Shown here: in pieces, positions 12,523 to 38,110 of the stretch | Numbering within the stretch: the first letter of the stretch is position 1 | Layout of the letters: every line of letters begins with the position of its first letter | NCBI RefSeq assembly: GCF_964188315.1 | Contig: NC_135667.1 | Location: forward strand, 11,532,001 to 11,596,000 | DNA length: 64,000 nucleotides | Direction: 5' to 3' | Source of the DNA: Podarcis muralis | Lineage: Eukaryota | The notes under the pieces: model-generated | Seen by the model: only the letters and a program-made list of their open reading frames with translations | Told to the model about the DNA's origin: nothing | Database searches by the model: none | Translations under genes and position numbers: made by a program

Positions 12523-13424
12523 TTACATCTTTCTCCGTATCAGCTGCTCTCTGTTATTCAGCTCAGGCCTCACCACAATAATGTAGCATTTAGGGGAAAA
12601 GATGCAACCCAGCAGCCCAGCACTGGAAACCAAGATGGAGAAGATCTCCACAGCCACCATGTATTTTCCTCTGGTGCTCAAGTATGTGGGAATAAAGGAG
12701 AACCAAACACTGCAGAAGACCAGCATGCTGAAGGTGATGAACTTGGCTTCATTGAAGCTGTCAGGCAGCTTCCTGGCTAAGAAGGCCACAGTGAAGCTGA
12801 TAATGGCCAGGAAGCCCATGTAGCCTAAAACGCAATAGAACATGAGAACTGACCCCTCATTACATAAGAATATAATTTCTTCACTGCTTGAGTGCATGTC
12901 CACATCTGGGAATGGGGCAGAGGTTGCCAGCCAGAAGGCACAGATTCCTACTTGAATCACAGAGCAGGAAAGGACAATGGAGTAAGCCAGTTTTCTGCCT
13001 ACCCACTTCCTGATTGTGGAATCTGGCTTGGTAGCCATGAATGCCAAAACCACTGAAATAGTCTTGGCCAAGATGCTAGAGAGGGCCACAGAGAAGACAA
13101 TGCCAAAAGCCGTTTGTCGGAGTGGGCAGGTTGCCTTATTAGGCATTCCAATGAACATCAAGGAGCACAGGAAACACAAGAGGAGGGAGATGAGGAGAAT
13201 GTAAGTGAGGCTTCTGTTATTGGCTTTGACGATGGCAGTGTTCCGGTGCTTAATGAAAATGCCAAGTACCATAGCTGTGATCAGAGAGAATAAAAGTGCA
13301 GAAAAAGTTGAAATGATGGCCAAAGTTTCACCAAAGCCTAGCACGTTTGGTTTCTTGGGAATGCACTCATTCTGCTCTTCATTTGGATATTGATCCGGAG
13401 GACATCTGGCACAGGTTTCCAACT
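12523..13424 (-). CDS. V2R B exon 6 (7TM)
   Basis: 902 bp, (E)LETCARCP...IRRKM*. Confidence 0.95.
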
Positions 13425-16400: not shown

Positions 16401-19400
16401 GACATCCGAAAAACATTCGCAAACCGGAACACTGACTTCCAGGTTTGCGGAATTCGGGTGTCAATTTGTTCAGGAGCCAAGCCATTCGAGAACCAAGGTA
16501 CCACTGTGGAATTATTAGTAGCATTGTTATTTGTAGTGGGCAGTACTTCCCTTTTCACCTCAAGTGGCAAAACCAGACATGCCACCCCTATATGCATTGA
16601 TTTCCTTACCTGAGTGAAGACTCTGTGCCATTGGATTCCATCCCCATTAAGGGTGAGCTCTTTTCCAGGAGGGGCCTGAGGATCCAGCTTTCCGACTTTG
16701 ACCCTGACATAGGAATTATTTGGGAAAGTGACCAGGTTTGTAATATCAAATCCGCCTGCCAATTCTCCATGTTCATTTAATGTGATTTCATCGCCAACAC
16801 TGTTGTTGAATGAGATTCTGTGCAGAAATGAGTGCAGCTAGGTGGAAAGAGAATCAAAAGGTCCATGAAGTCTTGTAATAGCCTTACTAAGACAATTCAA
16901 TAGGTTTCCTGGGAGAATTTAAGTTCTTTTCCTCCAGGGGTCCCCCACTTCAGTTCCCAATGGAGGGGACCAAGATTTCAACAGCAGATCAAATAGAGAG
17001 GGAAATCATAAATCAGTGTAAACTCAACAGTCATGAGATAGAATAAATAGCAAGATGAAAGATTAAAATATTTTTTTATTAAAAGATGATCCAAAAATAA
17101 CTTCCTGAAGAGAAGCAGGTCTTTTTGTTTTAAGACAGTCTTTAAAAGAATCTCTCCCCCCACCCTTTTAAAATAATTCCAGTAGCACCATAAAGACCAA
17201 CTAAATATAAGCCTTTTAGGTATGAGCTTTCGTGTGCATACACACATCTTCAAATACTCTGAAGCTGAGGTCGCTACAACCTTATAACTGTTGATAACTG
17301 TTAATGATGGCAGTTGGTTCCACAGGGAAGGGCAAGGGATGTAAGGTGCTACTGGAATTATAAATATTTTTTTGGAAGTATTCTTTTAAAGACTGTCTTA
17401 AGAAAAAAAGACTCGATTCTCTTAAGGGAGTTCTTTTTGGATCATCTTTTAATAATTTTTTTAAAAAATCTTTCATCTTGTTATTTATTATGACTATGAC
17501 AGACCAACACGGCTACCTACCTGAATCTATAGTCATGAAATATGTATATAAAGGATGTAGACCTGTTTCCTTCAGAGCAGCCTTTGATAAGATTCAAGAT
17601 ATAGAAGGGATTTCAGATAATGGGCAGGAAAAGGGTCAGGTGCTCGTGTTCTTAAGACATTATATTAATGCAACATGGAAACATGTAGCTATAGCTCTCA
17701 TGTTAGGAGCTGGAGTTTCTTAGTTCAGGGCATCCATGCTTTCTGTATGTGTGTGGCTGTATGCTGCTCTGTATTAGTTACTGTGCCTTTAGTCAATGTA
17801 TGCCCTCTTCTGATAAGCAAGAAACCTCTTTTTGAGCAGTCTTGTGTGAGTATAGGTTCCTTGGTAATAGCGACTATTTAGGACACACAGTAGAGCAGTG
17901 TGCAATTGTTTCCCCATATGAAAGTCCTCACCTCTAAAGGGAATATGTTCTAGGTGGACATGTGAAGGGGCTCCCACAGCAATCAATGGCAGACTAGCTA
18001 CAACCTTTGCTACGCCTCTAGATGTACTGGACTCTTCCACTAGCCATCACATATCCAACACAAGTGGAGGGCATCAGCTCTTGGCTACTGTCACTGTGCT
18101 CTACACAGGACATTAGAAATGAGAGGGGCTTTATTGATGATATACAAAATGTCCCTAGAATTCATGTTCTGCTACAAGAAAGCAGCCTGCCACTGAAAAA
18201 AATCTTTGCTAATCTTGCTTAAATCATGGAAAGAAGAAGTAGGTAAACTGTTCCCAACCCAATCCCGACTAATACCCCTGTGTGGTGTTTGCCCTCCTAT
18301 GTGTGTGACATCATACTGGGTTCATAGGGAAACGGTTAACTAATTGTAAAATGACTAACGAATCGGAACCTAGGGGGCAGAGTTAACTGTGTATAAGGTT
18401 TAAGCACAGAGGTGGGGGTTTTTTGGAGAGAGAGTCAGAGTTGTGGAGAAGACAGTCTGGAGTTGGGGAGGCAGATAAGAAAAGTCTGTGGGTTGGGCTA
18501 GTCTGGTGGGAGAGAGTGAGAGAATTTGTTAAGAGGAGTCAGTCAAACAGTTGAGATAATCAGTCAGGAGGTATTAGGAAGGTATAAGCTGGTAAAGAAA
18601 CTGAAGTTAAGACACTGACAGGAATATTATCTGAGAAACCATAAACTTGTTAACGTTTGTAAAATAAACTTGTTTTTTTGGGTTCATTTTTAACAACTGA
18701 CTGGACTCAGTGTCTTATAGGCTGTGAGATTAACTCCACACAATGGATTAAAATGTGGTCTAAACCTCCCTTTAAAGCCATATCAACAAAAAGGAATTTC
18801 ACTCTGAAATTCACTTACAGATGGTACCTAACACCATGGAAACTAGTGCTAATACACCCAGGAATCTCACCAAGATACTCAAGAGGATGCAGCTCCACGG
18901 GCACATACCTCCATATATGGTGGGAATGTCCCCAAATCTAAACCTTCTGGACAGCAATCAAACAAGAAATATGCAAAATAACTAAGCAAGTATTAGAAGT
19001 CATCCCAGAACTGACCCTACTAAACATATTCCAAGATAATATTGCCCACTCACATGATAAGAAGCTTATAACCCACCTACTCTCAGCAGCCAGACACTGG
19101 AGAGACCTGTCATGAGTAAGCATGGACCAATGGTATCAAATAGTACGGGAAACAGCCTTATTAGAAAAATGAACCAATAAACTGAAACTGACATGGGGAC
19201 AAATAGAAGAAGACGCCTTCACCCCGTTATGGTTCCCCTTTATCACATACGTAGCCCGACAACACAATAACAAGAATCTGCCAACAGCATAGAAATCAAT
19301 CTGGCTAACCTGATTCAAAAATACCCCCCCCCCCACCTCACTACAGCTAACCAAAGACAAACAACCACACCCTCAACCACCCCCAACCTCACTCAACAAC

Positions 19401-22400
19401 AAGCAAATATAAGAAGTGTATAGTCAGAGAACCCATACAAGTAACGCTGACCCAAAATCCCACACATACACTAAGTAGAAGAATAGAGGAATAACCACCC
19501 GACCCATTCCCCCATCCCCTCTTTCCCCCTCTTTTCTTCCTAACAAAAAACCACTCTGTTCTATTCCCTTTGGTTCCCCTTTGTTTAAACCAATTCACGA
19601 ACCAAGGACTTATACATTGAGCACTAATAATGAACCATATGTTGTAGATATTACTCCACATTTATTATGCTATTTTTATGATATACAAAAGACATGAGAA
19701 AACTTGGTATACTTATTTGTATAATATTCTTGTTTATAAAATATTTGCTGAAAAAACATTTGCTTTGATGGAAGTCAGACAGGGCAAGTTCAAGCAAATA
19801 TTTTCTAGAATCATAGGATCATATAATTATAGAGTTGGAGGGGATCACAATAAAATTAGTTAATGTTCATTTTGATGTATTAAGATTTATTATTTTATTT
19901 ATTATAAATAAATCACAACCCATATTGTACATCAATGGATTGCAAAACACTGCACATGTTATAAAGACTTTATAACAGGAAACATTACCTGCCAGGGCTC
20001 TACATTCTGAAGAAAGAGTCTGTTTCCACCTTTTAACCTTTTGCAGATGGCTTCAGATGAGCACCTAATATGTAGGGCATGTGCCAGAGCACAGACAGCA
20101 TTATAGATACTGTAGCTGTGGCCAGTCATACTCATTTCAAAAACTGGCGCAGGAAGGCTCTCCAGCAACTCCTCACCAGTACATGTACCCAAAATGCCTG
20201 CCATTGCAGTGGCGTTTGAAAGTGTGCAAACAAATGCTTGTTGCCAGAAATCCTTGATAAAACCATCTGCATCTGCCCATGAAGGCTTTACACCCTGCAG
20301 AAAGTCTGAGAAGTCTTGAATCTCCTTGGAGTGAATTGTAATGGAGATAGCACCTTGGAGCACTTGTATATTAGGGTCCATCAGCTTTCTTGGAACATTT
20401 GATATGAAATCTATCTGGGCTGCTGTAATCCATACTTTCCCTTCAGGTTCTTTCCTCACAGATTGATGAAGAATTAGCTGAATCATATTCCTTGCAGTAA
20501 ACACAGCTGTAAGCCATATAATCGATGTACTTTCTCCATATATAACAACTGCATTTGCTTTGCTTTTTATGAAAGCTTGTGAGAAAAGCTTTGATTGATC
20601 CACCATATCAAATATTTTACCACTGAATTGCAGATAGTATTCTGTTCTTTCTGTGAATGCTGAACAGATTCCATTCTTGAAAAGCATTGGTTCAATGGTC
20701 TTCAAGAATTGTTCTCCAGCTTCATTAGCTGGAGTGATGAGCCCAACCCATTTCCATCTGAAATGCAGAAGTAACTGGATAATTCCCTTGTACTGAAGAT
20801 CTTCATTGGGGACCATGCGGTAAAAGGAAGCGAATTTGATGTGATCATTTATGGCCAGTTCAAATGAACCATATGAAATCTGAAGAAGAAAAAAGCCAAA
20901 CTTTTCCATGTGGAAACGAGAATTCACAACACACTCATTTATCTTATATAAATTATATGCATTCCATCTTTCAAATCCACCCTCCCCCCATTTGCATAGA
21001 AAAACACACAAAACAAACCATCTTGCTCATTTATTTATGTAGATATTAATTCCTATTATTGTGGAGTCATCACATGGATTGTGTCAAAGTCAGGAGAGCA
21101 TTTATCCATGCTCATTTCAACATACTACCTGGATAAATCAACAAAACTTGATTGTGGAAATGGAGGGAGACAAACCATTGATCATGTTCTTTTGGTCTAT
21201 AACCTTTAAAGCACTTGAAAAAACTTGGCTGGTTTTTATACTAAGAACTCTCATGGGAGTTCTCCTATAAGTTTCCTGAATATAATACGTTTTATTCTTC
21301 TGTGATCAACAATAAACCATATCCTATAAAATGTAAGTAAAATACCAGCAGAAATTAAGGCAATTAAAATGAAGTTCAGTAATGTAGTAGAACAACACAA
21401 AATTGGTACCACTATTTCTCTATCTCCAAATGCCAGAAAAATAACAAGAAAAGTGCTTTTCATTAGCCTCTGAAAGTGGACAGAGCTGAATAACATCACA
21501 CTTCCACAAGGTGGGAATTTCATGATTCCTAGGGAAGAAGAAGAAGAAGAATTTGGGTTTGATATCCCGCTTTATCACTACCCTAAGGAGTCTCAAAGAG
21601 GCTAATGTTCTCCTTTCCCTTCCTCCCCCAAAACAAACACTCTGTGAGGTGAGTGGGGCTGAGAGACTTCAAAGAAGTGTGACTAGCCCAAGGTCACCCA
21701 GCAGCTGCATGTGAAGGAGCTGAGATGCGAACCCGGTTCTCCAGATTACGAATCTACCGCTCTTAACCACTACACCCCCCTGGCTGGGAGAGAGCCATTC
21801 TTGTCCTGAGTTATTTATGCCTGTGCAAGCGATTATCAAAGCATGAATTGGGATTGGTGCTTTTCAGACATCTAGGACAATGCTTGAAGGATTGAAATAA
21901 TATGAGCCCAATCCTCCACTAAATATATTAAACACACATGTTTCAGAACATGACTCTCTCATAAAAGTTGGTTTATGCACTTACTAACCCCCACAAATAT
22001 ATCAATATATTGCAACCATTTTCATTTTTTGACTTGATACTTTTGAATCATCAGCTTCCTAATGGAAGGAGTGTAGAGTGAACTACGGTATGAAATATCT
22101 ATTTTTTGTACCTGTGGAATCTTGTAAAGACCTAAGACATCTGCCATGGATGAGGAGGTGTCAGAGCTAAGTCCCCCAATCACTCCTACTACTTTTTTCT
22201 GAATTCCACATATGTAGTTGGGGACAAAGTGATGTGATTTAAAGAGCAGATCCAGAGTGTTTTGGTAGGTCATCCTTGAATCAGAATAGGAATCATAGAT
22301 GTGGAATCCAAGCGTGGCATTGGGCAAGATCTTGGGATTCCCATTGATCTCATCAACAGCAAACACCAAGGCGAGGATGTGTTGGTAGAACTTTCTAATC

Positions 22401-24230
22401 ACCCTACAAATAAAGTGTGTTACTATTTTATGGGGAATAAAGCAGTGCACAACATCAAGATGTTAGAGATTAAACTGCCTCTGTTAACTATTCATGTCAA
22501 TATTGAAATTGCTTTGTGTGTTTAGAGTTAATGTTTGGATGTCTCCTCCATCCAAGTTAGATTTTTTAGTTGTCTGAAAACATAGGTTGAGAAGAGATCT
22601 TCACTTATGAAGCTTCTAGTTCTTTAACCATGTTGCTCTTTATCACTAGAAACAAGAACTGTGCCACATGGCTATGCTACAGTTATTGAAATCAGTTCGA
22701 TATCCCTTTGTCAGTACATAGCTGTCCCTAGCAATAGAAACAGTATGATATTAAACAAAGGAATTGGCAGCTGCCATTTTGATTATGAAGAATGCCCAGT
22801 GATGAGCTAGCAGTGATGATGGTAAAAGGGCTCTCCTCCCATTATTACTAAGCACATTTAAAATGTATCCCTGAATGTTTGCAATGTACTTTAGACATGC
22901 CTTCCATTTTGAACCATCCTTCACTAATGCAGCTCAAGCTGGGCTTCATAGTTCTCATCTCTCCGCTTGCCTCCCACAAAAGTGCCTAAGTTGTAGGTGA
23001 CACAGAAAATGGAGATTGGAACCCAGAAGGTTGCCATGATGTATTACTGTGGGCAGGAGGATGAATGGCTAGAGAACAAGTGGTGGTGATCTGAAACTGA
23101 ATCAGCTCAAACACAGTTGAAGTTTCATATCTTCATCTTTACCAGCACTGCGTCCACAACCAGCTATCTGGAAGAGCTTGAATATTCTTTTGTCATCTGG
23201 CCAAGACAGCATTTCTCTAATAAAGTTAGCAGCCTGCTGCTACGTCTTTGGAAATACTTTAGAGATGGAATCAGTTTCAGACGTCAAATGGTATGCTGTG
23301 CACTCTCTGTTCCATTTTTGCTGGAACAGTTTTGATTATTATGGCCAGAGGATGTAGTGAATGTGCTTGAAGAAATGAAGTTGTCAAACTGACCCCTTGA
23401 CCCTTGCCTGTCTTGGCTTTTTAAATGGAGCTTTATAGGATTGACTGGCAGTGGCAGACTTGGGTACTATGACACCTATTGCAAGGCTGAAAATTTGCAC
23501 CACGTAGACCTTGCATTGCCTTCCCTTAGGAAGGAGTCACAAGGCTCTGGCAGGGTCCTAGAATCCTTCCATCTAATTCTCAAAGCTGAAAAATTGCTAA
23601 CTAGGCTTTGTGAAGGAGGCAGGAGGACTCCAGAACCTTGTCAGATACTCATGGCTCTCTACTCAAGCCCAGTGCCTGGCTTACCTGGCTTTGAGGCAGT
23701 GCTCCCATGGCTCTGTCTCCAATGTGTGTACACTGCTCGCACAACCCTAATTCTGCCTCTTTGACTGGGGAAGTTCAGTGAGTTTTCTATGCTTCACTGG
23801 ATAATAGACACATACTGTCCAACTTGAAGCAGGTTATGGTGTGTCGCCTCTTTACTCTGAACCAAAAATGAAATATTCTTATAAATTCTTATGACTGTTT
23901 TTTAAAAAATTAATTTAAAATATTTTTTCATAGCATTTTTTCCAAAACAAAAGTACTTTCTAGGTGGATATAAATGTCTAAGGAATAAAAGAAATAATCT
24001 TAAGGTCCATTTACTTACACTGGATTGTCAATAAAGTCGTGTGATGGGTGTTGATGGAAGGAAATGCTGGGGAATACGTAATGGATATGAGACACTATCC
24101 CACCAATGATAAGGTCCCCTTGTTCATACCACTCATGGGGAATATGCACAGGGTTATTTCTGCTGCAAACAACAGTGTGCACTTTTGGAACCATATTGGG
24201 AAGCAGTAGGAGAAGCAGCAGCAACAACAT
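12523..24230 (-). CDS. V2R gene B, 6 exons, intact, 883 aa; mosaic of D-like 5' and C-like 3'
   Basis: Exons 24019-24230, 22112-22403, 19989-20879, 16610-16837, 14487-14613, 12523-13424; canonical splice sites, open frame. The ORF-track start 24239 is GTG; the real ATG is 24230. Confidence 0.93.
13842..14080. mobile_element. Tc1/mariner-type MITE, gene B intron 5
   Basis: Same family and site as the A copy, TA TSD. Confidence 0.82.
14487..14613 (-). CDS. V2R B exon 5
   Basis: 127 bp, [14 protein letters not shown]...[17 protein letters not shown]. Confidence 0.92.
15042..15732. mobile_element. Solo LTR-like element, gene B intron 4
   Basis: TGTCA...TGACA termini; no TSD visible; copies in C and D. 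Confidence 0.6.
16001..16506. mobile_element. Composite of two MITE families, gene B intron 4
   Basis: 16001-16245 is an inverted copy of the intron-5 family; 16248-16506 is a second family lacking its left TIR, ending AACCAAGGTACCACTG. Confidence 0.75.
16610..16837 (-). CDS. V2R B exon 4
   Basis: 228 bp, [17 protein letters not shown]...HRVFTQ. Confidence 0.92.
17041..17530. mobile_element. Penelope-like element relic with long inverted arms (gene B intron 3)
   Basis: PLE pseudo-LTR-type motifs (CCAGTAGCACC..AGACCAACT, TATGAGCTTTCGTGTGCA, CAGACCAACACGGCTACC); inverted arms 17043-17189 and 17345-17488; flanking direct repeat AGTCATGA(G/A)ATA; absent from A and D. Confidence 0.75.
17220..17257 (-). 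ncRNA. Minimal hammerhead ribozyme copy with core substitution (CUGAAGA to UUGAAGA) in gene B intron 3
   Basis: Identical to 31159-31196 except plus-strand A at 17253 instead of G. Confidence 0.72.
18211..19750 (+). mobile_element. 5'-truncated L1-type LINE, gene B intron 3, interrupted by an LTR-like segment
   Basis: RWYLTPWKL...[11 protein letters not shown] zinc-knuckle region of L1 ORF2; 3' UTR; paralogous to the C and D copies. Confidence 0.82.
18281..18726 (+). mobile_element. LTR-like segment inside the gene B L1
   Basis: Starts TGTGG, AATAAA near 18663; replaces about 340 bp of L1 present in D; 3' end not a clean CA. Confidence 0.55.
19989..20879 (-). CDS. V2R B exon 3
   Basis: 891 bp, ISYGSF...EPWQ. 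Confidence 0.93.
21536..21785 (-). mobile_element. Squam3-like SINE with (TTC)n tail, gene B intron 2
   Basis: Same family as 10970-11210; absent from A and D intron 2. Confidence 0.82.
22112..22403 (-). CDS. V2R B exon 2
   Basis: 292 bp, VIRKFYQ...KIPQ. Confidence 0.93.
24019..24230 (-). CDS. V2R B exon 1
   Basis: [17 protein letters not shown]...FIDNPV, donor GTAAGT. Confidence 0.87.
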
Positions 24231-25760: not shown

Positions 25761-26095
25761 GAGTCTCGTGCATGGCTCAGATATATTGAGCAATGCATTG
25801 ACTCAACATAAGGCAGCTTACAAGGTTCCCTTTCCCCTTTCCTCTATCTGCAGTTTCCAACGCACCCCAACATCTGCTCAGGAGTTTCAGAACCTATTGG
25901 GAAAGTGGATGCCAGAAAATTAGAGTAAGGGATTAGAGTAACCCAATTCATTTCCATATCATATGTAACTATGCTGGATCCCAAAAACATAAATGATAAG
26001 ACAAGCTCTTCTGTTATTTTGACCCCCACATCTGACACTGGCCAGAAAGGTTATAGAGCCTAACTCCCAACATAAACTACAATCTCTTCTGTCAT

Positions 26096-26254
26096 TTATA
26101 AGTTGCTCCATATCAGCTGTTCTCTATTAATCAGTTCAGGCCTTATCATAATAATGTAGCATTAAGGGGAAAAGAGGCAAGCCAGCAAGCCAGTACTGGA
26201 AGCCAAGATGGAGAAAATCTCCACAGCCACCATGTATTTTCTTCTGGTGCTCAG
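26096..26254 (-). pseudogene. Remnant of E-type V2R exon-6 3' end downstream of gene C
   Basis: Near-identical to 12155-12313. Confidence 0.85.
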
Positions 26255-26463
26255 AGGTGCTACAGATATCATCCATAGTTTTCCCCCAGTTCATTTACAC
26301 GTCATATGCAACTACACTGGATATCAAGAATATAAATGATAAGACAATCTCTTCTGTAATTTTCATCATTTCAGGTAACTTCCTTTCTTGAAAAAACCAC
26401 AGGGAAATTACCATGCCAACAAGTCTAGAGTGTAAATACAGAAATGACAAACTATTCTGTTAT

Positions 26464-27365
26464 TTACATCTTTCTCCGTATCAGCTGCTCTCTGTTATTC
26501 AGCTCAGGCCTCACCACAATAATGTAGCATTTAGGGGAAAAGATGCAACCCAGCAGCCCAGCACTGGAAGCCAAGATGGAGAAGATCTCCACAGCCACCA
26601 TGTATTTTCCTCTGGTGCTCAAGTATGTAGGAATAAAGGAGAACCAAACACTGCAGAAGACCAGCATGCTGAAGGTGATGAACTTAGCTTCATTGAAGCT
26701 GTCAGGCAGCTTCCTGGCTAAGAAGGCCACAGTGAAACTGATAATGGCCAGGAAGCCCATGTAGCCTAAAACGCTATAGAACATGAGAACTGACCCCTCA
26801 TTACATAAGAATATAATTTCTTCACTGCTTGAGTGCATGTCCACATCTGGGAATGGGGCAGAGGTTGCCAGCCAGAAGGCACAGATTCCTACTTGAATCA
26901 CAGAGCAGGAAAGGACAATGGAGTAAGCCAGTTTTCTGCCTACCCACTTCCTGATTGTGGAATCTGGCTTGGTAGCCATGAATGCCAAAACCACTGCAAT
27001 AGTCTTGGCCAAGATGCTAGAGAGGGCCACAGAGAAGACAATGCCAAAAGCCGTTTGTCGGAGTGGGCAGGTTGCCTTATTAGGCATTCCAACGAACATC
27101 AAGGAGCACAGGAAACACGAGAGGAGGGAGATGAGGAGAATGTAAGTGAGGCTTCTGTTATTGGCTTTGACGATGGCAGTGTTCCGGTGCTTAATGAAAA
27201 TGCCAAGTACCATAGCTGTGATCAGAGAGAATAAAAGTGCAGAAAAAGTTGAAATGATGGCCAAAGTTTCACCAAAGCCTAGCACGTTTGGTTTCTTGGG
27301 AATGCACTCATTCTGCTCTTCATTTGGATATTGATCCGGAGGACATCTGGCACAGGTTTCCAACT
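26464..27365 (-). CDS. V2R C exon 6 (7TM)
   Basis: 902 bp including stop. Confidence 0.95.
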
Positions 27366-30300
27366 CTGAAAAAAGGTTGCATGACAATTGGATACAATCC
27401 GGAATATGCTTAAGAGTGTGTTTTTTAAAACTCAGGAGACCCCTTACCATAGTGTTTCCCAAAAAGGAAAAGTTTCAAAACGTCTAGTTCAAATGCTTGT
27501 GCCCTTGATGCTTTGAAAATAAAGTTATGCATGAAATCTTACATTTCATATATGGAGAAACTATTATTTTGGTGGTCCTCCTCCATTTTCTTAGAACCAC
27601 AGATACTTCAGAATGAAATCAGAGAAATATTATAGCTGAAATCTTGGAAGCAAGACGGGTGGTTTTTATAGGATTTTAACACTGTCCCCAAAGAGCCTTG
27701 GTCTTAGAGAAAAAACCGCCACTTCTATTCCATCCTCCCTTCCCCAAAACTTTAGTGTTGTCTTCCAGGACAACATGTATGTACAGTGGTACCTCGGGTT
27801 AAGAACTTATTCCATTGTGGAGGTCCATTCTTAACCTGAAACTGTTAACCTGAGGCACCACTCTAGCTAATGGGGCCCCCCACTGCCGCCACACCGCCAC
27901 CATGTGATTTCTGTTCTCATCCTGAAGCAACATTCTTAACCCGAGGTACTATTTCTGAGTTAGCGGAGTCTGTAACCTGTAGTGTCTGTAACCTGAAGCG
28001 TCTGTAACCCAAGCTACCACTGTATGAAATTTATGTCGTTGCATCAAAACAGATTTGAGGTGAAGCTACGCTAGTGGTTTATAAAGTTAAAATGCATTAT
28101 TAAAATGTGACACCACAGCAGGGAGCCACCAGCAATGGGAAACTGCATTAAACATTATGGAACATTATATTTAATAACATTTAAATGATCAATGTAGATA
28201 CAGTGATGGAAAATCTTTATGTGACAGATAAAGTCACATTCTGATGGTTTACTCCATAGAAAGCTAAGATAATTTCTTCATAGTGGCAGTTTTTACTGAG
28301 ACTGAAGGGAAATTAAGATACTATTTTTATTAAAGAATATAAATTGGGTCCATACAGAGCAAACCCCATTGCCCATTTGTTCATAATTTACTAAAGTAAC
28401 TTGTATATGCTAATATGGCACCTCTCACCCTTCTCATTTGAGAACATCCCATGAGGACATGGATCACAAGCATAACAACAGAACTTCTTCCCCTCCTTCT
28501 TTTTCTTCTCATAACCAGGAAGACAGTTGGCATTGCATAATGATACGGGTGGCACCTATCCAAAGATATAGGAAGAGGTTAATATTAAGCAAATGTTTCA
28601 GGGATTCATCTAACATCAGGTGATCTATCATTAAATAGGAGGGCCAGAAATGTTAAATGTAGGATCCATACTCTCAATATATGCAAAAGAATCTCTTCAT
28701 CCTTCATATAAAGGAAATGGAAATGGGATCTAGCAAATATGGGGTTAACAATCCTGACAGCAAAATGGATGTGGGCATTAAGACATTCCAAAAATGTTTA
28801 TTAGTGTGAACCTGAAATATATTTTGCCTGCCTGCCCGCCTTCTGTCTCTTGCAACTCCATCCACCAGCCTCTCTTTTCTTCCCTCCAAGCTAAGCTTTG
28901 CACTCTACTTACACTTACAACAGTGCCAACAGCTAACTAGGGATGTGGAACTGCACCGCTGCTCTGATGGCCAACGCCAGTGGTGTCATGGGCCAGGAGT
29001 CGGCTTCACCTGCTGAACAGCAGCCTAAAGGAGCAGAAGGCAAAGTGACTCCACCTGCTGCTGATCAGCCTTCTTGCTCCTGATGAGAACCAGCTGGCTC
29101 CAGTTTTTAAAGCAGGGTTTCCAGCCTCAGTCAGTTGCTGGAAACAACTTTTGTCATTCCTGACCAGACCTTGCTGCTCATGGTCTTCTCGTGATCTTGC
29201 TTCTCGTGACCTTGGCCCCTTGACTTTCTTGATCCCCAGATTGTCTGACTATGTGAACTGTAATACTCCTGAGGTTAGGACTGGACTGAACTGTGTACAG
29301 TAATACCTCCTTGAACGTACACCCCGTTGAGCGTCCATTCTGCTGAATGTCTGCGGCAAAACCAGAATTACGGGAACGGGTTACCGCTTGCGAATGTGTG
29401 TGTGTGCAGAACAGCCCTTTGTCATGCATCCCTTTCACCGAGCATCTGGGACTCTGCCTCCAGTCCAGTACCCCCCTGAGATGTGGCTGGTTGGCTGGCT
29501 GCTCCCTCCTCTGAGGGAGCACAGGACCATGACAAACAGCTGGATTCCTTCCCTAGGCATGCCTTGCCCAGCAGCCCATGGAGTACTTGGATGGGCAGCC
29601 GGGTTTCAAGCCACTCTGAGCAAGGCATGATTTGGGGGGCTCCTCCTGGGTCTGTGGCAGGGGCCAACCTGACAAACACCTCCAAACACTCCTGCTTCTA
29701 TCATTCCAGTTCAAAACTAGGGTCCCAAGTGGCATCTGAAAAACTCATGAAGATTACAATGTTCATTCACAAAGATACAGCTAGCTTAGCATTCTATCTA
29801 ATGCTACTAAGTAGAGAGCTGCCTTGAACAAACAATCATGTTGGACGACACTCTCTGATAGCCATTGGTCCTTCTTAGTTTGGCATGTCTTCCTTGAATG
29901 TTGCTCTTTTTGAAGAAATAGTTCATTTCACATTTACTAATACAGTGTTACCTCAGGTTACAGACGCTTTAGGTTACCGACGCTTCAGGTTACAGACTCT
30001 GCTAACCCAGAAATATTACCTTGGGTTAAAAACTTTGCTTCAGGATGAGAACAGAAATCGTGCAGCAGCAGCGGAGAGGCGGCAGCAGGAGGCCCCATTA
30101 GCTAAAGTGGTGCTTCAGGTTAAGAACAGTTTCAGGTTAAGAATGGACCTCCAGAACAAAATAAGTTCTTAACCCGAGGTACCACTGTATAGTTCTTGAA
30201 CTTAATATGTTAACCTTAGTTCTTGAACTTAACATGTTCCAGAAATCCGTTCGACTCCCAAAACTGTTTAAAAAACCAAGCTGTGGCTTCTGATTGGCTG

Positions 30301-33300
30301 TAGTAGCTTCCTGTACTCAAGTGGAAGCCGCGTCAGATGTTCGACATCCGAAAAACATTCGCAAACCGGAACACTGACTTCCAGGTTTGCGGAATTCGGG
30401 TGTCAATTTGTTCAGGAGCCAAGCCATTCGAGAACCAAGGTACCACTGTGGAATTATTAGTAGCATTGTTATTTGTAGTGGGCAGTACTTCCCTTTTCAC
30501 CTCAAGTGGCAAAACCAGACATGCCACCCCTATATGCATTGATTTCCTTACCTGAGTGAAGACTCTGTGCCATTGGATTCCATCCCCATTAAGGGTGAGC
30601 TCTTTTCCAGGAGGGGCCTGAGGATCCAGCTTTCCGACTTTGACCCTGACATAGGAATTATTTGGGAAAGTGACCAGGTTTGTAATATCAAATCCGCCTG
30701 CCAATTCTCCATGTTCATTTAATGTGATTTCATCGCCAACACTGTTGTTGAATGAGATTCTGTGCAGAAATGAGTGCAGCTAGGTGGAAAGAGAATCAAA
30801 AGGTCCATGAAGTCTTGTAATAGCCTTACTAAGACAATTCAATAGGTTTCCTGGGAGAATTTAAGTTCTTTTCATCGAGGGGTCCCCCACTTCAGTTCCC
30901 AATGGAGAGCACCCAGATTTCAACAGCAGATCAAATAGAGAGGGAAATCATAAATCAGTGTAAACTCAACAGCCATGGGATAGAATAAATAGCAAGATGA
31001 AAGATTAAAATATTTTTTTATTAAAAGATGATCCAAAAATAACTTCCTGAAGAGAATCAAGTCTTTTTGTTTTAAGACAGTCTTTAAAAGAATCTCCCCC
31101 CCCCTTTTAAAATAATTCCAGTAGCACCATAAAGACCAACTAAATATAAGCCTTTTAGGTATGAGCTTTCGTGTGCATACACACATCTTCAGATACTCTG
31201 AAGCTGAGGTCGCTACAACCTTATAACTGTTGATAACTGTTAATGATGGCAGTTGGTTCCACAGGGAAGGGCAAGGGATGTAAGGTGCTACTGGAATTAT
31301 AAATATTTTTTTGGAAGTATTCTTTTAAAGACTGTCTTAAGAAAAAAAGACTCGATTCTCTTAAGGGAGTTCTTTTTGGATCATCTTTTAATAATTTTTT
31401 TAAAAAATCTTTCATCTTGTTATTTATTATGACTATGACAGACCAACACGGCTACCTACCTGAATCTATAGTCATGAAATATGTATATAAAGGATGTAGA
31501 CCTGTTTCCTTCAGAGCAGCCTTTGATAAGATTCAAGCTGTAGAAGGGATTTCAGATAATGGGCAGAAAAAGAGTCAGGTCTCATGTTCTCAAGACATTA
31601 TATTACTGCAACATGGAAACATGTAGCTGTAGCCCTCATGTTAGGAGCTTGAGTTTATTAGTTCAGGGTATCCATGATTTCTGTATGTGTGTAGTTGAAT
31701 GCTGCTCTGTATTAGTTACTGCACATTTAGTCAATGTATGCGCTCTTCTGATAACCAAGAAAACTCTTTTTGAGCAGTCTTGTGTGAGTATATGTTCCTT
31801 GGTAATAGGGACTACTTGGGACACACAGTAGAGCAGTGTGCAATTTTTCCCCATATGAAAGGCCTCACCTCTAAAGGGAATATGTTCTAGGTGGACATGT
31901 GAAGGGGCTCTCACAGCAATCAATGGCAGACTAGCTACAACCTTTGCTACGCCTCTAGATGTACTGGACTCTTCCACTAGCCATCACATATCCAACACAA
32001 GTGGAGGGCATCAGCTCTTGGCTACAGCATGTCACACCACTGTGCTCTACACTGGACATAAGATATGAGAGGGGCTGTATTGAAGATATACAAAATGTCC
32101 CTAGAATTCATGTTCTGCTATAAGAAAGCAGCCTGCCACTGAAAAAAATCTTTGCTAATCTTGCTTAAATCATGGAAAGAAGAAGTAGGTAAACTGCTCC
32201 CAACCCAATCCCGACTAATACCCCTGTGTGGCGTTTGCCCTCCTATGTGTGTGACATCATACTGGGTTCATAGGGAAAGGGTTAACTAATTGTAAAATGA
32301 CTAACGGATCGGAACCTAGGGGGCAGAGTTAACTGTGTATAAGGTTTAAGCACAGAGGTGGGGTTTTCTTGGAGAGAGAGTCAGAGTAGTGGAGAAGACA
32401 GTCTGGAGTTGGGGAGGCAGATAAGAAAAGTCTGTGGGTTGGGCTAGTCTGGTGGGAGAGAGTGAGAGAATTTGTTAAGAGGAGTCAGTCAAACAGTTGA
32501 GATAATCAGTCAGGAGGTATTAGGAAGGTATAAGCTGGTAAAGAAACTAAAGTTAAGACACTGACAGGAATATTATCTGAGAAACCATAAACTTGTTAAC
32601 GTTTGTAAAATAAACTTGTTTTTTTGGGTTCATTTTTAACAACTGACTGGACTCAGTGTCTTATAGGCTGTGAGATTAACGCCACACAATGGACTAAAAT
32701 GTGGTCTAAACCTCCCTTTAAAGCCATATCAACAAAAAGGAATTTCACTCTGAAATTCACTTACAGATGGTACCTAACACCATGGAAACTAGCGCTAATA
32801 CACCCAGGAATCTCACCAAGATACTCAAGAGGATGCACCTCCACGGGCACATACCTCCATATATGGTGGGAATGTCCCCAAATCCAAACCTTCTGGACAG
32901 CAATCAAACAAGAAATATGCAAAATAACTAAGCAAGTATTAGAAGTCATCCCAAAAGTAACCCCACTAAACCTATTCCAAGATAATATTGCCCACTCACA
33001 TGATAAGAAGCTTATAACCCACCTACTCTCAGCAGCCAGACACTGGAGAGACCTGTCATGAGTAAGCATGGACCAATGGTATCAAATAGTATGGGAAACA
33101 GTCTTATTAAAAAAACGAACCAATAAACTGAAACATGGGGACAAATAGAAGAAGACGCCTTAATCCGATATGGTTCCCCTTTATCACATGCATAGCTCGA
33201 CATCACAATAACAAGAATCTGCCAACAGCATAGAAATCAATCTGGCTAACCTGATTCAAAAATACATCCACCCTCCCCAACCCCCACCCCTACCTCACTA

Positions 33301-36300
33301 CAGTGAACCCAAAGCCACCCCCAACCTCTCTCAACACCAAGCAAATATAACAAGTGAATAGTCAGAGAACCCATATAAGTAATGCTGACCCAAAACCCCA
33401 CGCATACACAAAGTAGAAGAATAGAGGAATAACCACCAGACCCATTCCCCCATCCCCTCTTTCCCCCTCTTTTCTTCCTAACAAAAAACCACTCTGTTCT
33501 ATCCCCATTGTTTCTACTTTGTTTAAACCAATTCATGAACCAAGAACTTATACATTGACTAATGAAACATATGTTGCAGATATTACTGCACATTTATTAT
33601 TCTATTTTTGTGATATAGAAAAGACATGAGGAAACTTGGTATACTTATTAGTATAATATTATTCTTGTTTATAAAACCCAATAAAAAGTTATGTTTTTTA
33701 AAAAATCTTTGCTTTGATGGAAGTCAGACAAGGCATGTTCAAGCAAATATTTTCTAGAATCATAGGGTCATATAATTATAGAGTTGGAGGGGATCACAAT
33801 AAAATTAATGTTCATTTTGATGTATTAAGATTCATTATTTTATTTATTATAAATAAATCACAACCCATATTGTACATCAATGGATTGCAAAACACTGCAC
33901 ATGTTATAAAGTAAAGACTTTGTAACAGGAAACACTACCTGCCAGGGCTCTACATTCTGAAGAAAGAGTCTGTTTCCACCTTTTAACCTTTTGCAGATGA
34001 CTTCAGATGAGCACCTAATATGTAGGGCATGTGCCAGAGCATAGACAGCATTATAGATACTGTAGCTGTGGCCAGTCATGCTCATTTCAAAAAATGGTGC
34101 AGGGAGGCTCTCCAGCAACTCCTCTCCAGTACATGTACCGAAAATAGCTGCCATTGCAGTGGCGTTTGAAAGTGAACAACCAAATGCTTGTTGCCAGAAA
34201 TCCTTGATAAAACCATATGCATCTTGTCCAGAAGGCTTTACACTGTGCAGAAAGTCTGAGAAGTCTTGAATCTCCTTGGAGTGAATTGTAATGGAGATAG
34301 CACCTTGGAGCACTTGTATATTAGGGTCAATACCTTTTCTTGCAACATTTGATATGAAATCTATCTGGGCTGCTGTAATCCATACTTTCCCTTCAGGTTC
34401 TTTCCTCACAGATTGATGAAGAATTAGCTGAATCATATTCCTTGCAGTAAACACAGCTGTAAGCCATATAATCGATGTACTTTCTCCATATATAACAACT
34501 GCATTTGCTTTGCTTTTTATGAAAGCTTGTGAGAAAAGCTTTGATTGATCCACTATATCAAATATTTTACCACTGAATTGCAGATAGTATTCTGTTCTTT
34601 CTGTGAATGCTGAACAGATTCCATTCTTGAAAAGCATTGGTTCAATGGTCTTCAAGAATTGTTCTCCAGCTTCATTAGCTGGAGTGATGAGCCCAACCCA
34701 TTTCCATCTGAAATGCAGAAGTAACTGGATAATTCCCTTGTACTGAAGATCTTCATTGGGGACCATTCGATAAAAGGAAGCGAATTTGATGTGATCATTT
34801 ATGGCCAGTTCAAATGAACCATATGAAATCTGAAGAAGAAAAAAGCCAAACTTTTCCATGTGGAAACGAGAATTCACAACACACTCATTTATCTTATATA
34901 AATTCTATGCATTCCATCTTAAAAACCACCCTCCCATTTACATAGAAAAACACACAAAACAAACCATCTTGCTCATTTATTTATGTAGATATTAATTCCT
35001 ATTATTGTGGAGTCATCACATGGATTGTGTCAAAGTCAGGAGAGCATTTATCCCTGCTCGTTTCAACATACTACCTGGATAAATCAACAAAACTTGATTG
35101 TGGAAATGGAGGGAGACAAACCATTGTTCATGTTCTTTTGGTCTATAACCTTTAAAGCACTTGAAAAGACTTGGCTGGTTTTTATACTAAGAACTCTCAT
35201 GGGAGTTCTCCTATAGGTTTCCTGAATATAATATGTTTTATTCTTCTGTGATCAACAATAAACCATATCCTATAAAATGTAAGTAAAATACCAGCAGAAA
35301 TTAAGGCAACTAAAATGAAGTTCAGTAATGTAGTAGAACAACACAAAATTGGTACCACTATTTCTCTATCTCCAAATGCCAGAAAAATAACAAGAAAAGT
35401 GCTTTTCATTAGCCTATGAAAGAGGACAGTGCTGAATAACGTCACACTTCCACAAGGTCGGAATTTCATGATTCCTAGGGAAGAAGAAGAAGAAGAGTTT
35501 GGGTTTGATATCCCGCTTTATCACTACCCGAAGGAGTCTCAAAGAGGCTAATGTTCTCCTTTCCCTTCCTCCCCCAAAACAAACACTCTGTGAGGTGAGT
35601 GGGGCTGAGAGACTTCAAAGAAGTGTGACTAGCCCAAGGTCACCCAGCAGCTGCATGTGGAGGAGCTGAGACGCGAACGCGGTTCTCCAGATTATGATTC
35701 TACCGCTCGTAACCACTACACCACCCTGGCTGGGAGAGAGCCATTCTTGTCCTGAGTTATTTATGCCTGTGCAAGCGATTATCAACAGCATGAATTGGGA
35801 TTGGTGCTTTTCAGACATCTAGGACAATGCTTGCAGGGTTGAAATAATGTGAGCCCAATCCTCCACTAAATATATTAAACACACATGTTTCAGAACATGA
35901 CTCTCTCATAAAAGTTAATGCACTTACTAACCCCCACAAATATATCAATATATTGCAACCATTTTCCTTTTTCGACTTGATATTTTTGAATCATCAGCTT
36001 CCTAATGGAAGGAGTGTAGAGTGAACTACGGTTAGAAATATCTATTCTTTGTACCTGTGGAATCTTGTAAAGACCTAAGACATCTGCCATGGATGAGGAG
36101 GTGTCAGAGCTAAGTCCCCCAATGACTCCTACTACTTTTTTCTGAATTCCACATATGTAGTTGGGGACAAAGTGATGTGATTTAAAGAGCAGATCCAGTG
36201 TGTTTTTGTAGGTTATCCTTGAATCAGAATAGGAATCATAGATGTGGAATCCAAGCGTGACATTGGGCAAGATCTTGGGATTCCCATTGATCTCATCAAC

Positions 36301-38110
36301 AGCAAACACCAAGGCGAGGATGTGTTGGTAGAACTTTCTTATCACCCTACAAATAAAGTGTGTTACTATTTTATGGGGAATAAAGCAGTGCACAACATCG
36401 AGATGTGATAGATTTAACTGCCTGTGTTAAATATTCTTGTAAATATTCAAATTGCTTTGTCCTTTTAGAGTTAATTTTTGGATGTCTCCTCCATCCAAGT
36501 CAGAATTTTTATTTGTCTGAACACAAAGATTTAGAAGAGATCTTCACTTACTAAGCTTCAGGTTTTTTAACCATGTTGCTTTTTATTACTAGAAACATGC
36601 ACAATTATTGAAATCATTTCTACACTTCTTTGTCAGTTCTTGTCCCTAGGAAGATAAACTGGTATTAAATGAAAATAAAGGAATTGGCAGCTGCCATTTT
36701 GAATACGAAGAATGCCAAGTGACGATCTGGCAGTGAAGATGGTAAAATGGCTCTCATCCTATTATTACTAAGTGCATTTATGGCTTATCCCTGATTGCTT
36801 TCAATGTGCTTTAGACATAACTTCAATTTTATACCACCCTTCACTGAAGCATCTCAAGCTGGGTTTTACAGTTCTCCTCTCTCCCCTTGCATACTCAGGA
36901 AAGCTCCTAGGTTGTAGTTGGCCAAGTAAATGGAGATTTGAACCCAGATGTCCCCAATGCAAGTCTGCCATGCTACATTACTGTGGGCAGGAGAATCAGT
37001 AGCTAGAAAGCAAGTGGTAGTAATCTGAAACTGAATCAGCTCAAACATGGCTGAGGTTTCATTTCTGCACCTGGTACGTGGCAGGGAAGGGGCAGTGGTG
37101 ATGACAGCTTACTTCTTCACTACAATTGTGTCCACAACTAGGTGTCTGGGGGCCACATGACTTGGAAAAAATGTCTGAAGAAGTAGACAAATGCTGGCTC
37201 CATTGAAATGTAAAGCGAGATGAGCAACCCCAGAGTCGTTCGTGACTGGACTTAACTGTCAGGGGTCCTTTTACCTTTACCATGATTAAATCCAGTGAAA
37301 TGGTATGCAGTGCGCCCTCTGTTCCATCTTTGCTAGATCACTCTAAATTATTGTGGCCGGAGGATGTAGTGAACGCACTTGAAGAAATGAAGCTGCCAAA
37401 TTGATCCCTTGCCTGGCTTATGGAAGGAAAAGCAAGGTTCGGGTAGGGTCCTAGAGCTTCCCACCTGGTTCCCAAAGCTGGAAAAGTGCTAACTAGGCTT
37501 TGGGAAGGAGGGAGGAAGGCTCTAGGACCTTATCAGAGCCCATGCCTCTTTCTCAAAGCCCAGCGCCTTGCTTACCAGGTTTTGAGACAGCACTTCCATG
37601 GCTCTGGGCCCGATGTATGGCAACTTCTTGCAGAACCCTAACGCTGCCCTTGTGACTGGGGAGGTCTAGCGAGTGATAGATGATTCATTGGAGGATGGAG
37701 AGATCCCATGTATCTTGGAGCAGGTTATGGTGTATCCCCTCTTTCAGAGTACTGCTCTAAACTAAGAGTAGAAGAGTCTTATAAAAATCTTACTATTGGG
37801 TTTAATCTTACTTTGGCTTTCAAAGTGAACCAAGTGCTTTATAGTCAGATATAAATGTAGAAAGAATAAATGAAATTGTTTAAGAGCCATTTACTTACCT
37901 TGGGTTGTCAATAAAGAACTGAGAAGGGTGTTTATGGAAGGAAATGCTGGGGAATATGCAATGGAAATGGGACACTATCGCGCCAATGGTAAGGTCACCT
38001 TGCTCATACCATTCAGGTAGAATATGCACAGGATTATTTCTGCTGCAAACAACAGTATGCACTTGGGGCACCATACTGGGAAACAGTAGGAGCAGGAGCA
38101 GCAACAACAT
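26464..38110 (-). CDS. V2R gene C, 6 exons, intact, 883 aa (892 aa from ATG 38137)
   Basis: Exons 37899-38110, 36055-36346, 33939-34829, 30552-30779, 28429-28555, 26464-27365; canonical splice sites, open frame. Confidence 0.93.
27784..28022. mobile_element. Tc1/mariner-type MITE, gene C intron 5
   Basis: Near-identical to 13842-14080. Confidence 0.82.
28429..28555 (-). CDS. V2R C exon 5
   Basis: 127 bp, matches B exon 5. Confidence 0.92.
28984..29674. mobile_element. Solo LTR-like element, gene C intron 4
   Basis: Near-identical to 15042-15732. Confidence 0.6.
29943..30448. mobile_element. Composite MITE, gene C intron 4
   Basis: Paralog of 16001-16506. Confidence 0.75.
30552..30779 (-). 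CDS. V2R C exon 4
   Basis: 228 bp, identical to B exon 4 by eye. Confidence 0.92.
30983..31469. mobile_element. Penelope-like element relic with inverted arms (gene C intron 3)
   Basis: Paralogous copy of 17041-17530; arms 30985-31128 and 31284-31427. Confidence 0.75.
31159..31196 (-). ncRNA. Minimal type-I hammerhead ribozyme (Penelope-type), intact core, in gene C intron 3
   Basis: GUAU-CUGAAGA-U-GUGUG(UAUG)CACAC-GAAA-GCU-C-AUAC: full core, 4-bp stem I, 5-bp stem II, palindromic AGCU in place of stem III. Confidence 0.8.
32157..33700 (+). mobile_element. 5'-truncated L1-type LINE, gene C intron 3
   Basis: Same ORF2 C-terminus; AATAAA tail; 13-bp TSD AAAAATCTTTGCT; empty site in gene A. 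Confidence 0.85.
32227..32673 (+). mobile_element. LTR-like segment inside the gene C L1
   Basis: Paralog of 18281-18726. Confidence 0.55.
33939..34829 (-). CDS. V2R C exon 3
   Basis: 891 bp. Confidence 0.93.
35482..35731 (-). mobile_element. Squam3-like SINE, gene C intron 2
   Basis: Same insertion site as the B copy. Confidence 0.82.
36055..36346 (-). CDS. V2R C exon 2
   Basis: 292 bp. Confidence 0.93.
37150..37281 (+). mobile_element. Degenerate Sauria SINE 3' fragment
   Basis: ...CCCCAGAGTC...CAGGGGTCCTTTTACCTTTACC tail. Confidence 0.6.
37899..38110 (-). CDS. V2R C exon 1
   Basis: [17 protein letters not shown]...FIDNPR, donor GTAAGT. Confidence 0.86.

What the first reader, a model, noticed from the sequence alone, without database searches (positions are those of the whole stretch)
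31159..31196. Hammerhead ribozyme in the sense pre-mRNA of V2R gene C, core-mutated in its twin B
Seen: on the transcribed strand of intron 3, gene C reads GUAU CUGAAGA U GUGUG-UAUG-CACAC GAAA GCU C AUAC. This has both conserved hammerhead core boxes, a 4-bp stem I, a 5-bp stem II, a CUC cleavage triplet (cut between 31163 and 31162) and a palindromic AGCU instead of stem III. The gene B copy (17220-17257) differs at one base, the conserved C3 (UUGAAGA). Established: Penelope-like elements carry such minimal type-I hammerheads, which cleave poorly as monomers and better as dimers through the palindromic stem III. Inference: two near-identical receptor paralogs may differ in whether their nascent RNA can self-cleave about 380 nt upstream of exon 4, affecting splicing, output or truncated products. 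It may equally be a neutral passenger.
Basis: partly seen in the sequence, partly recalled or inferred. Interest (0 to 1): 0.8.

Follow-up and report, generated by a model that had tools for sequence, protein, structure and literature searches.

The report
Penelope-type minimal hammerhead, intronic repeat copy
The 38-base hammerhead-ribozyme motif is really there, but it is one ordinary copy of a very abundant Penelope-type retroelement repeat that landed in a vomeronasal receptor intron before the gene duplicated, and nothing suggests it cuts the receptor's RNA.

Summary
On the minus strand, which is the sense strand of V2R gene C, 31196..31159 reads as a minimal type-I hammerhead. The gene B copy (17257..17220) differs only at C3 (17253).

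It is not a chance look-alike and not a host invention. The motif sits in a 487-bp insertion (30983-31469) with a 12-bp target-site duplication. Two older paralogs in the window lack the insertion.

Reads and contigs laid at 80% likeness give depth several hundred to about 2000 times the unique flanks. This covers two parts of the insertion: the motif segment (31096-31203) and an AC-rich 3' end (31420-31491). Both species tested show it.

The motif meets the published marks of Penelope-like-element minimal hammerheads, except for a short helix II. Such motifs are reported not to cleave detectably as monomers.

Gene C carries one copy with no partner in the window. A competing 7-bp hairpin buries the CUGAAGA box. 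RNA reads show no ends at the predicted cut.

The B/C difference fits neutral drift. B is the derived state.

Verdict: already known kind, neutral passenger. Another agent of this scan reached the same reading on a different copy in this genome.

The parts
31159..31196 (-). Minimal type-I hammerhead motif, gene C copy, with the core intact. Predicted cut lies between 31163 and 31162.
   Evidence: Sequence read. It is the only descriptor hit in the window. It lies inside the high-copy segment.
17220..17257 (-). Gene B copy of the same motif, with C3 changed to U at 17253.
   Evidence: Position 31192 does not appear among the listed family variants, so C is read as the family state and U as derived.
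30983..31469 (.). The whole 487-bp retroelement insertion in intron 3 of gene C. Gene B has the same insertion at about 17041-17530.
   Evidence: The insertion is absent from the paralogs at about 45.65 kb and 5.2 kb. Empty-site contigs join 30982 to 31487.
30971..30982 (+). Left copy of the 12-bp target-site duplication (AGCCATGGGATA).
   Evidence: In gene B the two copies match at 11 of 12 positions.
31470..31481 (+). Right copy of the target-site duplication (AGTCATGAAATA).
31096..31203 (-). High-copy family segment holding the hammerhead. Family homology stops at 31196, the 5' end of helix I.
   Evidence: Depth is 71,000-354,000 against about 150-300 in the unique flanks (X1). The second species (X18) shows the same pattern. 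Loose ends occur at 31196.
31420..31469 (+). High-copy AC-rich 3' end of the family element. It belongs to the 5'-truncated partial copy that lies on the plus strand and has no hammerhead.
   Evidence: depth 135,000-432,000 and family ends at 31462-31470. One search shows it occurs only in the B and C insertions within the window.
30984..31131 (.). Left arm of the inverted repeat. It is the long linker of the partial copy that carries the hammerhead.
   Evidence: (pairs I1-I3). Depth is low, about 150-1000.
31281..31428 (.). Right arm of the inverted repeat. It is the same linker in the opposite-strand partial copy.
31197..31280 (-). Leader upstream of the hammerhead, of moderate copy number. 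It supplies CUUCAGA, which pairs with the UCUGAAG of the core box.
   Evidence: Depth is about 2,300. The 7-bp hairpin 31203..31187 appears in the predicted folds.

Best explanation
The motif is the minimal hammerhead of a Penelope-like-element (PLE) derived short retroposon family that is present in very many copies in this squamate genome.

One RNA of a long-linker subfamily was reverse-transcribed into intron 3 of the ancestor of V2R genes B and C. This produced a 12-bp target-site duplication and a head-to-head pair of partial copies. One copy, on the plus strand, is 5'-truncated, keeps the AC-rich 3' end and has no hammerhead. The other, on the minus strand, keeps the hammerhead but lacks the 3' end. 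The overlap of the two copies forms the 148-nt inverted-repeat arms.

The gene then duplicated. Gene C kept the family-consensus core and gene B picked up a neutral C3-to-U change.

In the element's own life cycle the hammerhead is thought to process element RNA as a dimer or with the element's protein. As a lone copy in a V2R intron it is a passenger that is spliced out with the intron and does not cut the pre-mRNA to any meaningful extent.

Shown: the sequence, the insertion, the target-site duplication, the high copy number, the family consensus, the lack of a partner, and the lack of read ends.

Inferred: the insertion mechanism, the PLE affiliation of this particular family, and the inactivity.
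For: 1. Insertion status. B and C share the 487-bp block, while the paralogs at 45.65 kb and 5.2 kb have the empty site. Contigs with the empty site exist (joints 30982 to 31487 and 30982 to 31510). The 12-bp duplication matches 11 of 12 in gene B.

2. Repeat family. laid 1883 contigs from X1 and 1593 from X18. Depth is several hundred to about 2000 times the flank level over 31096-31203 and 31420-31491 only.

3. Canonical layout. Reads join 31116 and 31423 on opposite strands (36+55 RNA reads in X23). In ordinary family copies, therefore, the AC-rich end and the hammerhead segment lie on one strand about 140 nt apart. The window's copy is an inverted rearrangement of that layout.

4. Family consensus. 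Inside the motif the listed majority differences are only two. 31179 is in loop II, where U becomes C. 31185 is the extra base, where U becomes A. The core boxes match the window's gene C copy.

5. Published PLE minimal-hammerhead marks are present. These are helix I of 4-5 bp, a base between 9 and 10.1, G10.1-C11.1, and palindromic 15.2-16.2 (PMC4209133). That paper reports such motifs in turtles and snakes.

6. Comparison with Poseidon_Ac of Anolis. Its hammerhead has the same architecture, with an AUG at A9-U-G10.1, as in the window copy. PAc extends both DNA strands and initiates reverse transcription in an AC-rich stem-loop. This fits the inverted pair and the AC-rich end.

7. Inactivity:
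- Single PLE minimal hammerheads give no detectable cleavage, and dimers cleave weakly.
- The PAc hammerhead needs the element's protein, and no RNA-seq ends were found at its site.
- Here the HH-compatible fold has a predicted occupancy of 1e-5 to 1e-7 with 20-200 nt flanks.
- There is no second motif in the window.
- There is no pile-up of read ends in two RNA runs, each with 300-500 family reads over the motif (table 6).

8. Neutrality. There are 4 substitutions and one indel in the 487-bp insertion. The local rate is 2.1% over 3.5 kb, so 0.3-0.8 changes are expected in 38 nt.
Against: - Rfam hammerhead models give no hit even at E up to 10. However, I know of no Rfam model for hammerheads that lack helix III, so this is weak evidence.
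- Helix II is 5 bp, against the 6-8 bp typical of PLE minimal hammerheads.
- No reverse transcriptase / GIY-YIG ORF was examined, so the link of this family to an autonomous PLE rests on architecture and literature.
- The RNA runs are of unknown tissue, almost certainly not vomeronasal. Standard libraries also capture 5'-OH and cyclic-phosphate ends poorly, so the absence of ends is weak evidence.
- Ninety-five variant rows were not displayed, so minority variants at core positions cannot be excluded.
- Secondary-structure energies ignore tertiary contacts and co-transcriptional folding.
Confidence: 0.86

Rival explanations
1. The intact sense-strand hammerhead cleaves gene C's nascent pre-mRNA about 380 nt upstream of exon 4, alone, as a trans-dimer with other family RNAs, or helped by PLE protein. 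Gene B has lost this ability through C3-to-U, so the two paralogs differ in output or in truncated products.
For: The core is intact and sense to the gene. C3 is essential, since C3 and G8 mutations abolish PAc hammerhead cleavage. Thousands of family copies could in principle provide trans partners. Retrozymes are reported as depleted from introns in Xenopus, which hints that some hammerhead repeats are costly in genes.
Against: There is no cis partner. Monomers of this class are inactive in vitro. The competing hairpin and the long inverted repeat disfavour the active fold. There are no read ends at the site. The B/C difference is within the neutral expectation. Thousands of similar copies sit elsewhere in the genome, so nothing singles this one out.
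Confidence: 0.05
2. A chance resemblance: a sequence that happens to satisfy a loose hammerhead descriptor, with no relation to any ribozyme.
For: The chance rate of a loose descriptor is not negligible over a whole scan: 9e-8 per base, or thousands of hits in 32 Gb of searched strand. There is no Rfam hit. The fold z-scores are unremarkable. The CUGAAGA box is half of a local palindrome.
Against: The motif is the consensus of a very high-copy family in two species. It carries three features that my descriptor did not require: the G10.1-C11.1 pair, the palindromic AGCU, and family homology that starts exactly at helix I. It also has the same architecture and start-codon placement as the tested Anolis PLE hammerhead.
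Confidence: 0.03
3. A cut-and-paste MITE with terminal inverted repeats that merely carries the motif in its loop. This was my first impression.
For: There are 148-nt inverted arms, 85-92% complementary, around a 149-nt centre.
Against: The arms are low copy, while the centre and one flank are very high copy. The 45-nt AC-rich end lies outside the palindrome on one side only. The target duplication is 12 bp. Canonical family copies join the two high-copy parts directly on one strand (opposite-strand joints).
Confidence: 0.03
4. The relevant feature is not the hammerhead but the long intronic fold-back. This would form a roughly 148-bp imperfect dsRNA in the pre-mRNA of genes B and C and could feed editing or small-RNA pathways or slow splicing.
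For: Arms are 85-92% complementary, and folds in context are dominated by arm pairing (MFE -163 kcal/mol with 200-nt flanks).
Against: No RNA reads cover the arms, so nothing is known about editing or small RNAs. Such fold-backs are common by-products of PLE insertion.
Confidence: 0.03

Closest known systems
Minimal hammerheads (min-HHR) of Penelope-like elements (Cervera and de la Pena 2014, PMC4209133)
   Same: Both are type I with no real helix III and a palindromic 15.1-16.1 stretch (AGCU). Both have a 4-bp helix I, an unpaired base between A9 and G10.1, a G10.1-C11.1 pair and CUGANGA/GAAA boxes. Both occur as huge, mostly solitary copy sets spread through the genome, and reptiles are among the reported hosts.
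   Different: Helix II here is 5 bp with a tetraloop, against the usual 6-8 bp. This family's link to a coding PLE was not examined here.
Poseidon_Ac (PAc) hammerhead of Anolis carolinensis (PMC11167929)
   Same: Both have the same box order, an extra U after A9 giving an AUG at A9-U-G10.1, a 4-nt palindromic helix III substitute and a short helix I. The PAc element has an AC-rich reverse-transcription start region and primes on both DNA strands. That matches the AC-rich end and the inverted double copy here.
   Different: The sequence family is different, and no similarity is visible outside the core. In PAc the AUG opens an 846-aa RT/endonuclease ORF. Here it opens a meaningless 88-codon frame (30920-31186), and the family consensus has A instead of U at that base.
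Non-LTR retrozymes of animals (PMC7229834; bioRxiv 10.64898/2026.07.22.740005)
   Same: Both are short non-autonomous hammerhead-bearing repeats related to PLE pLTRs. Reptile consensus lengths average 176 bp. Monomer copies are dispersed, and many lie in introns.
   Different: Retrozymes are defined by tandem units that yield circular RNAs and mostly carry canonical hammerheads with loop-loop contacts. Here there is a single unit, no tandem, and a minimal core.
Conserved intronic hammerheads of amniotes (HH9, HH10; Rfam RF02275, RF02277)
   Same: Both are hammerheads lying sense within an intron.
   Different: HH9 and HH10 are single-copy, deeply conserved, stable monomeric ribozymes. Here there is no Rfam match, the motif is a young repeat copy, and one of the two paralogs is already mutated.

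Membership tests
PLE minimal hammerhead (min-HHR) | Catalytic boxes CUGANGA and GAAA, then U16.1 and H17, in type-I order | tested here: met
   One search shows this for gene C. The gene B copy fails at C3.
PLE minimal hammerhead (min-HHR) | Short helix I (4-5 bp) | tested here: met
   GUAU pairs with AUAC, 4 bp.
PLE minimal hammerhead (min-HHR) | Unpaired nucleotide between A9 and G10.1 | tested here: met
   It is U in the window copy and A in the family majority (31185 A>T on the plus strand).
PLE minimal hammerhead (min-HHR) | G10.1-C11.1 closing pair of helix II | tested here: met
PLE minimal hammerhead (min-HHR) | Palindromic 15.2-16.2 in place of helix III, which allows a dimer | tested here: met
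   AGCU. As a caveat, cofolding of two 38-mers prefers a 16-bp duplex through the palindromic helix II strands.
PLE minimal hammerhead (min-HHR) | Long helix II (6-8 bp) | tested here: not met
   Helix II is 5 bp plus a tetraloop. A sixth U-G pair would consume G12.
PLE minimal hammerhead (min-HHR) | Membership of a multi-copy consensus family in the genome | tested here: met
   depth is several hundred to about 2000 times the flanks, thousands of contigs were laid, and two species show it.
PLE minimal hammerhead (min-HHR) | Location in the pLTR of an element that encodes RT and GIY-YIG endonuclease | not tested
   The window holds no coding PLE next to the motif, and no eukaryotic genome search tool was available. 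Unchecked notes of this scan report Penelope ORFs with hammerheads elsewhere in this genome.
PLE minimal hammerhead (min-HHR) | Self-cleavage at the predicted site | not testable with these tools
   The only indirect evidence is that no read ends lie at 31162/31163 in two RNA runs.
Canonical type-I hammerhead (Rfam Hammerhead_1, HH9, HH10) | Score above threshold with the covariance model; stable helix III; loop 1-loop 2 contacts | tested here: not met
   There is no hammerhead hit at gathering score on the window, nor at E up to 10 on 601-nt stretches around both copies.
Non-LTR retrozyme | Tandem head-to-tail units, each with a hammerhead | tested here: not met
   There is one motif per insertion, and no other copy of the family segment in 64 kb.

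The most novel reading that the evidence does not exclude
In vomeronasal neurons that also express PLE protein or abundant family RNA, the intact sense-strand hammerhead of gene C could be driven into an active protein-assisted or trans-dimeric form. It would then cut some nascent transcripts in intron 3. Gene B, with U3, would escape. A transposon ribozyme would thereby contribute to unequal expression of two near-identical receptor paralogs.
Probability: 0.03. Interest if true: 0.55.

Novelty: already known. Interest (0 to 1): 0.1.

Why it matters
It matters little as a discovery. Minimal hammerheads carried by Penelope-like elements, scattered in thousands of mostly solitary copies through fish, amphibian and reptile genomes, were described in 2014. 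This is one such copy.

It is useful as a calibration point. A motif that looks like a striking paralog-specific ribozyme is explained by repeat membership plus neutral drift.

The one open general question it touches is whether lone sense-strand PLE hammerheads in introns ever cut host pre-mRNAs. That is better asked genome-wide, through the orientation and core integrity of intronic copies, than at this locus.

Tried and rejected
- **Rfam.** I searched the whole window at gathering score and both copies at E up to 10. No hammerhead family appeared, only noise hits. I do not count this against a helix-III-less variant.
- **MITE reading.** I first read the block as a MITE with terminal inverted repeats. 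I dropped this once the depth profile showed that the arms are low copy while the centre and one outer flank are high copy. The 12-bp target duplication also argued against it.
- **Public collections.** I tried to collect independent family copies for a covariation test. Exact-pattern scans of viral contigs and metagenome contigs with the motif found nothing. An 18-mer from the AC-rich end gave 17 metagenome loci, none containing the hammerhead segment, so these are chance matches in microbial contigs. No covariation test could be done.
- **Literature search by sequence strings** found nothing.
- **Paper supplement.** The supplement of PMC4209133 is not held as text, so I could not check whether this exact family is in its figures.
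- **RNA runs for the gene.** The search found contigs only in other species and no vomeronasal data for this species. The RNA reads laid therefore come from other family copies, not from gene C.

Full report
**1. The observation**

The minus strand of 31159-31196 reads GUAU, CUGAAGA, U, GUGUG-UAUG-CACAC, GAAA, GCU, C, AUAC. In hammerhead numbering this gives:
- helix I of 4 bp;
- the C3-A9 box;
- one extra base;
- helix II of 5 bp closed by G10.1-C11.1;
- G12-A14;
- A15.1-G-C-U16.1, the palindrome AGCU;
- C17 before a cut between 31163 and 31162.

The copy in gene B (17220-17257) is identical except at 17253, where C3 is U.

Gene C is a class-C GPCR on the minus strand. It has an ANF_receptor exon at 33858-34877 and a 7tm_3 exon at 26464-27462. 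The exon 4 acceptor lies near 30780.

A descriptor of my own finds only this site in the window. In 56 Mb of Markov sequence it hits at 9e-8 per base, or 0.011 per window. That is rare for one window but not for a scan of this size, so statistics alone do not decide the matter.

**2. The surroundings**

The motif lies in a block shared by genes B and C but missing from two older paralogs in the window, at about 45.65 kb and 5.2 kb. The alignment places the insertion at 30983-31469.

It is flanked by a 12-bp direct duplication of the target: 30971-30982 and 31470-31481. These match at 9 of 12 positions in gene C and 11 of 12 in gene B.

Inside the block, two arms of about 148 nt (30984-31131 and 31281-31428) are 85-92% complementary. 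They enclose a 149-nt centre that holds the motif. A 41-nt AC-rich stretch (31429-31469) lies outside the palindrome on one side only.

**3. Repeat membership**

I laid the contigs of one run of the same species (X1), the contigs of a run of a related species (X18), and two raw RNA-seq runs (X23, X24) on 30700-31750 at 80% likeness.

| Region | Depth in X1 |
|---|---|
| Unique flanks | about 150-300 |
| Palindrome arms | about 150-2,500 |
| 31096-31203 (holds the motif) | 71,000-354,000 |
| 31420-31491 | 135,000-432,000 |

X18 shows the same profile. The tool warns that summed contig depth is not a copy number. Even so, 1883 and 1593 contigs were laid, and 78-94 contigs carry the listed variants inside the motif.

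Family homology stops at 31196, the first base of helix I, and at 31462-31470 (loose ends). Reads join 31116 and 31423 on opposite strands (36+55 reads in X23). In ordinary family members, therefore, the AC-rich end and the hammerhead segment lie on one strand in a unit of roughly 140 nt.

The window's insertion is thus a head-to-head pair of partial copies of a long-linker variant:
- a plus-strand copy (31281-31469) that is 5'-truncated, without the hammerhead, and keeps the 3' end;
- a minus-strand copy (31196-30984, with a lower-copy leader at 31280-31197) that keeps the hammerhead and lacks the 3' end.

**4. The family consensus**

Within 31159-31196 the listed majority differences from the window copy are only two. 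At 31179, loop II U becomes C. At 31185, the extra base U becomes A.

Position 31192 (C3) is not among the listed variants. Gene C therefore carries the family state and gene B's U3 is derived. Ninety-five variant rows were not displayed, so minority variants at core positions cannot be excluded.

**5. Comparison with the literature**

Cervera and de la Pena (PMC4209133) defined minimal hammerheads in the terminal repeats of Penelope-like elements by these features:
- helix I of 4-5 bp;
- an unpaired base between 9 and 10.1;
- a conserved G10.1-C11.1 pair;
- palindromic 15.2-16.2;
- a long helix II.

They found them by the thousand, mostly as solitary copies, in fish, coelacanth, Xenopus, turtles and snakes. 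Single motifs showed no detectable self-cleavage. Dimers cleaved weakly and mostly at non-physiological Mg2+.

The present motif meets every feature except the long helix II.

The Anolis Poseidon element (PMC11167929) has the same architecture, with its start codon at A9-U-G10.1, as the window copy happens to have. Other findings reported for that element:
- its hammerhead needs the element's protein for cleavage in vitro;
- no RNA-seq reads begin or end at its cut site;
- the protein nicks and extends both DNA strands;
- reverse transcription starts in an AC-rich stem-loop.

The last two properties fit the inverted double copy, the long target duplication and the AC-rich end seen here. The link of this particular family to a coding PLE was not tested.

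**6. Would it cut the V2R pre-mRNA?**

Five lines of evidence bear on this:
- There is no second copy of the motif or of the family segment anywhere in the 64-kb window other than the gene B copy. Gene C's transcript therefore has no cis partner for a dimer.
- In context, the CUGAAGA box pairs with CUUCAGA immediately upstream, forming a 7-bp hairpin at 31203..31187.
- The ensemble weight of any fold that keeps helices I and II with an open core is 1e-5 to 1e-7 for flanks of 20 to 200 nt.
- Two 38-mers prefer a 16-bp duplex through the palindromic helix II strands.
- In the two RNA runs, 300-500 family reads cover the motif in each run, in both directions. No place shows a pile-up of molecule ends, and none of the loose-end places is at 31162/31163.

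The read evidence is weak. The tissue is unknown and these end chemistries are poorly captured. It does agree with the published negative result for Anolis.

**7. The B/C difference**

Genes B and C differ by 4 substitutions and one 3-nt indel in the 487-bp insertion. The local rate is 2.1% over the surrounding 3.5 kb. So 0.3-0.8 changes are expected in 38 nt.

About a third of the 38 positions are essential core. One hit on a core base is therefore unremarkable.

**8. Verdict**

The regulatory reading is not supported. This is a known kind of element behaving as a neutral intronic passenger.

This scan holds 213 notes mentioning hammerheads in the same genome. Another follow-up agent reached the same conclusion on a different copy. 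I treat those as leads, not as evidence.

Noticed in passing
window 30920-31186 (-): The U inserted after A9 creates an AUG at A9-U-G10.1, which opens an 88-codon frame through the linker. It has no Pfam match. The tested Anolis Poseidon element places its real start codon at the same spot in its hammerhead. The family majority here has A instead of U, so no AUG.
   Followed up: partly
window 30984-31131 and 31281-31428: The two partial element copies form a roughly 148-nt imperfect inverted repeat inside the pre-mRNAs of genes B and C. This is a potential long dsRNA. No RNA reads cover it in the runs laid.
   Followed up: no
window 30821-31139 (X18 record 12): A contig of the related species bridges the left insertion junction with 11 differences and 4 gaps. 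The insertion, or a paralogous copy of it, therefore predates the split of the two species. Both species also have empty-site paralog contigs.
   Followed up: no
window 31202 (loose ends in X23 and X24): 244 and 145 RNA reads continue beyond 31202 into one and the same foreign sequence, with agreement 0.93-0.94. One particular family copy therefore sits in an abundant transcript in those samples.
   Followed up: no
window 30700-30807: Contig depth is 10-20 times the unique level over the start of exon 4, as expected for a large V2R gene family with conserved exons.
   Followed up: no
window 26000-37072 against 12059-23138: Genes B and C align at 95.9% over 11.1 kb. Similarity drops to about 74% beyond 37.4 kb. 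This is in line with the scan's note that gene B is a chimera.
   Followed up: partly
window 32624-33061 (+): A 145-aa ORF in intron 3 looks to me like the C-terminal part of a LINE reverse-transcriptase protein. It gave no Pfam match at E up to 0.01.
   Followed up: partly
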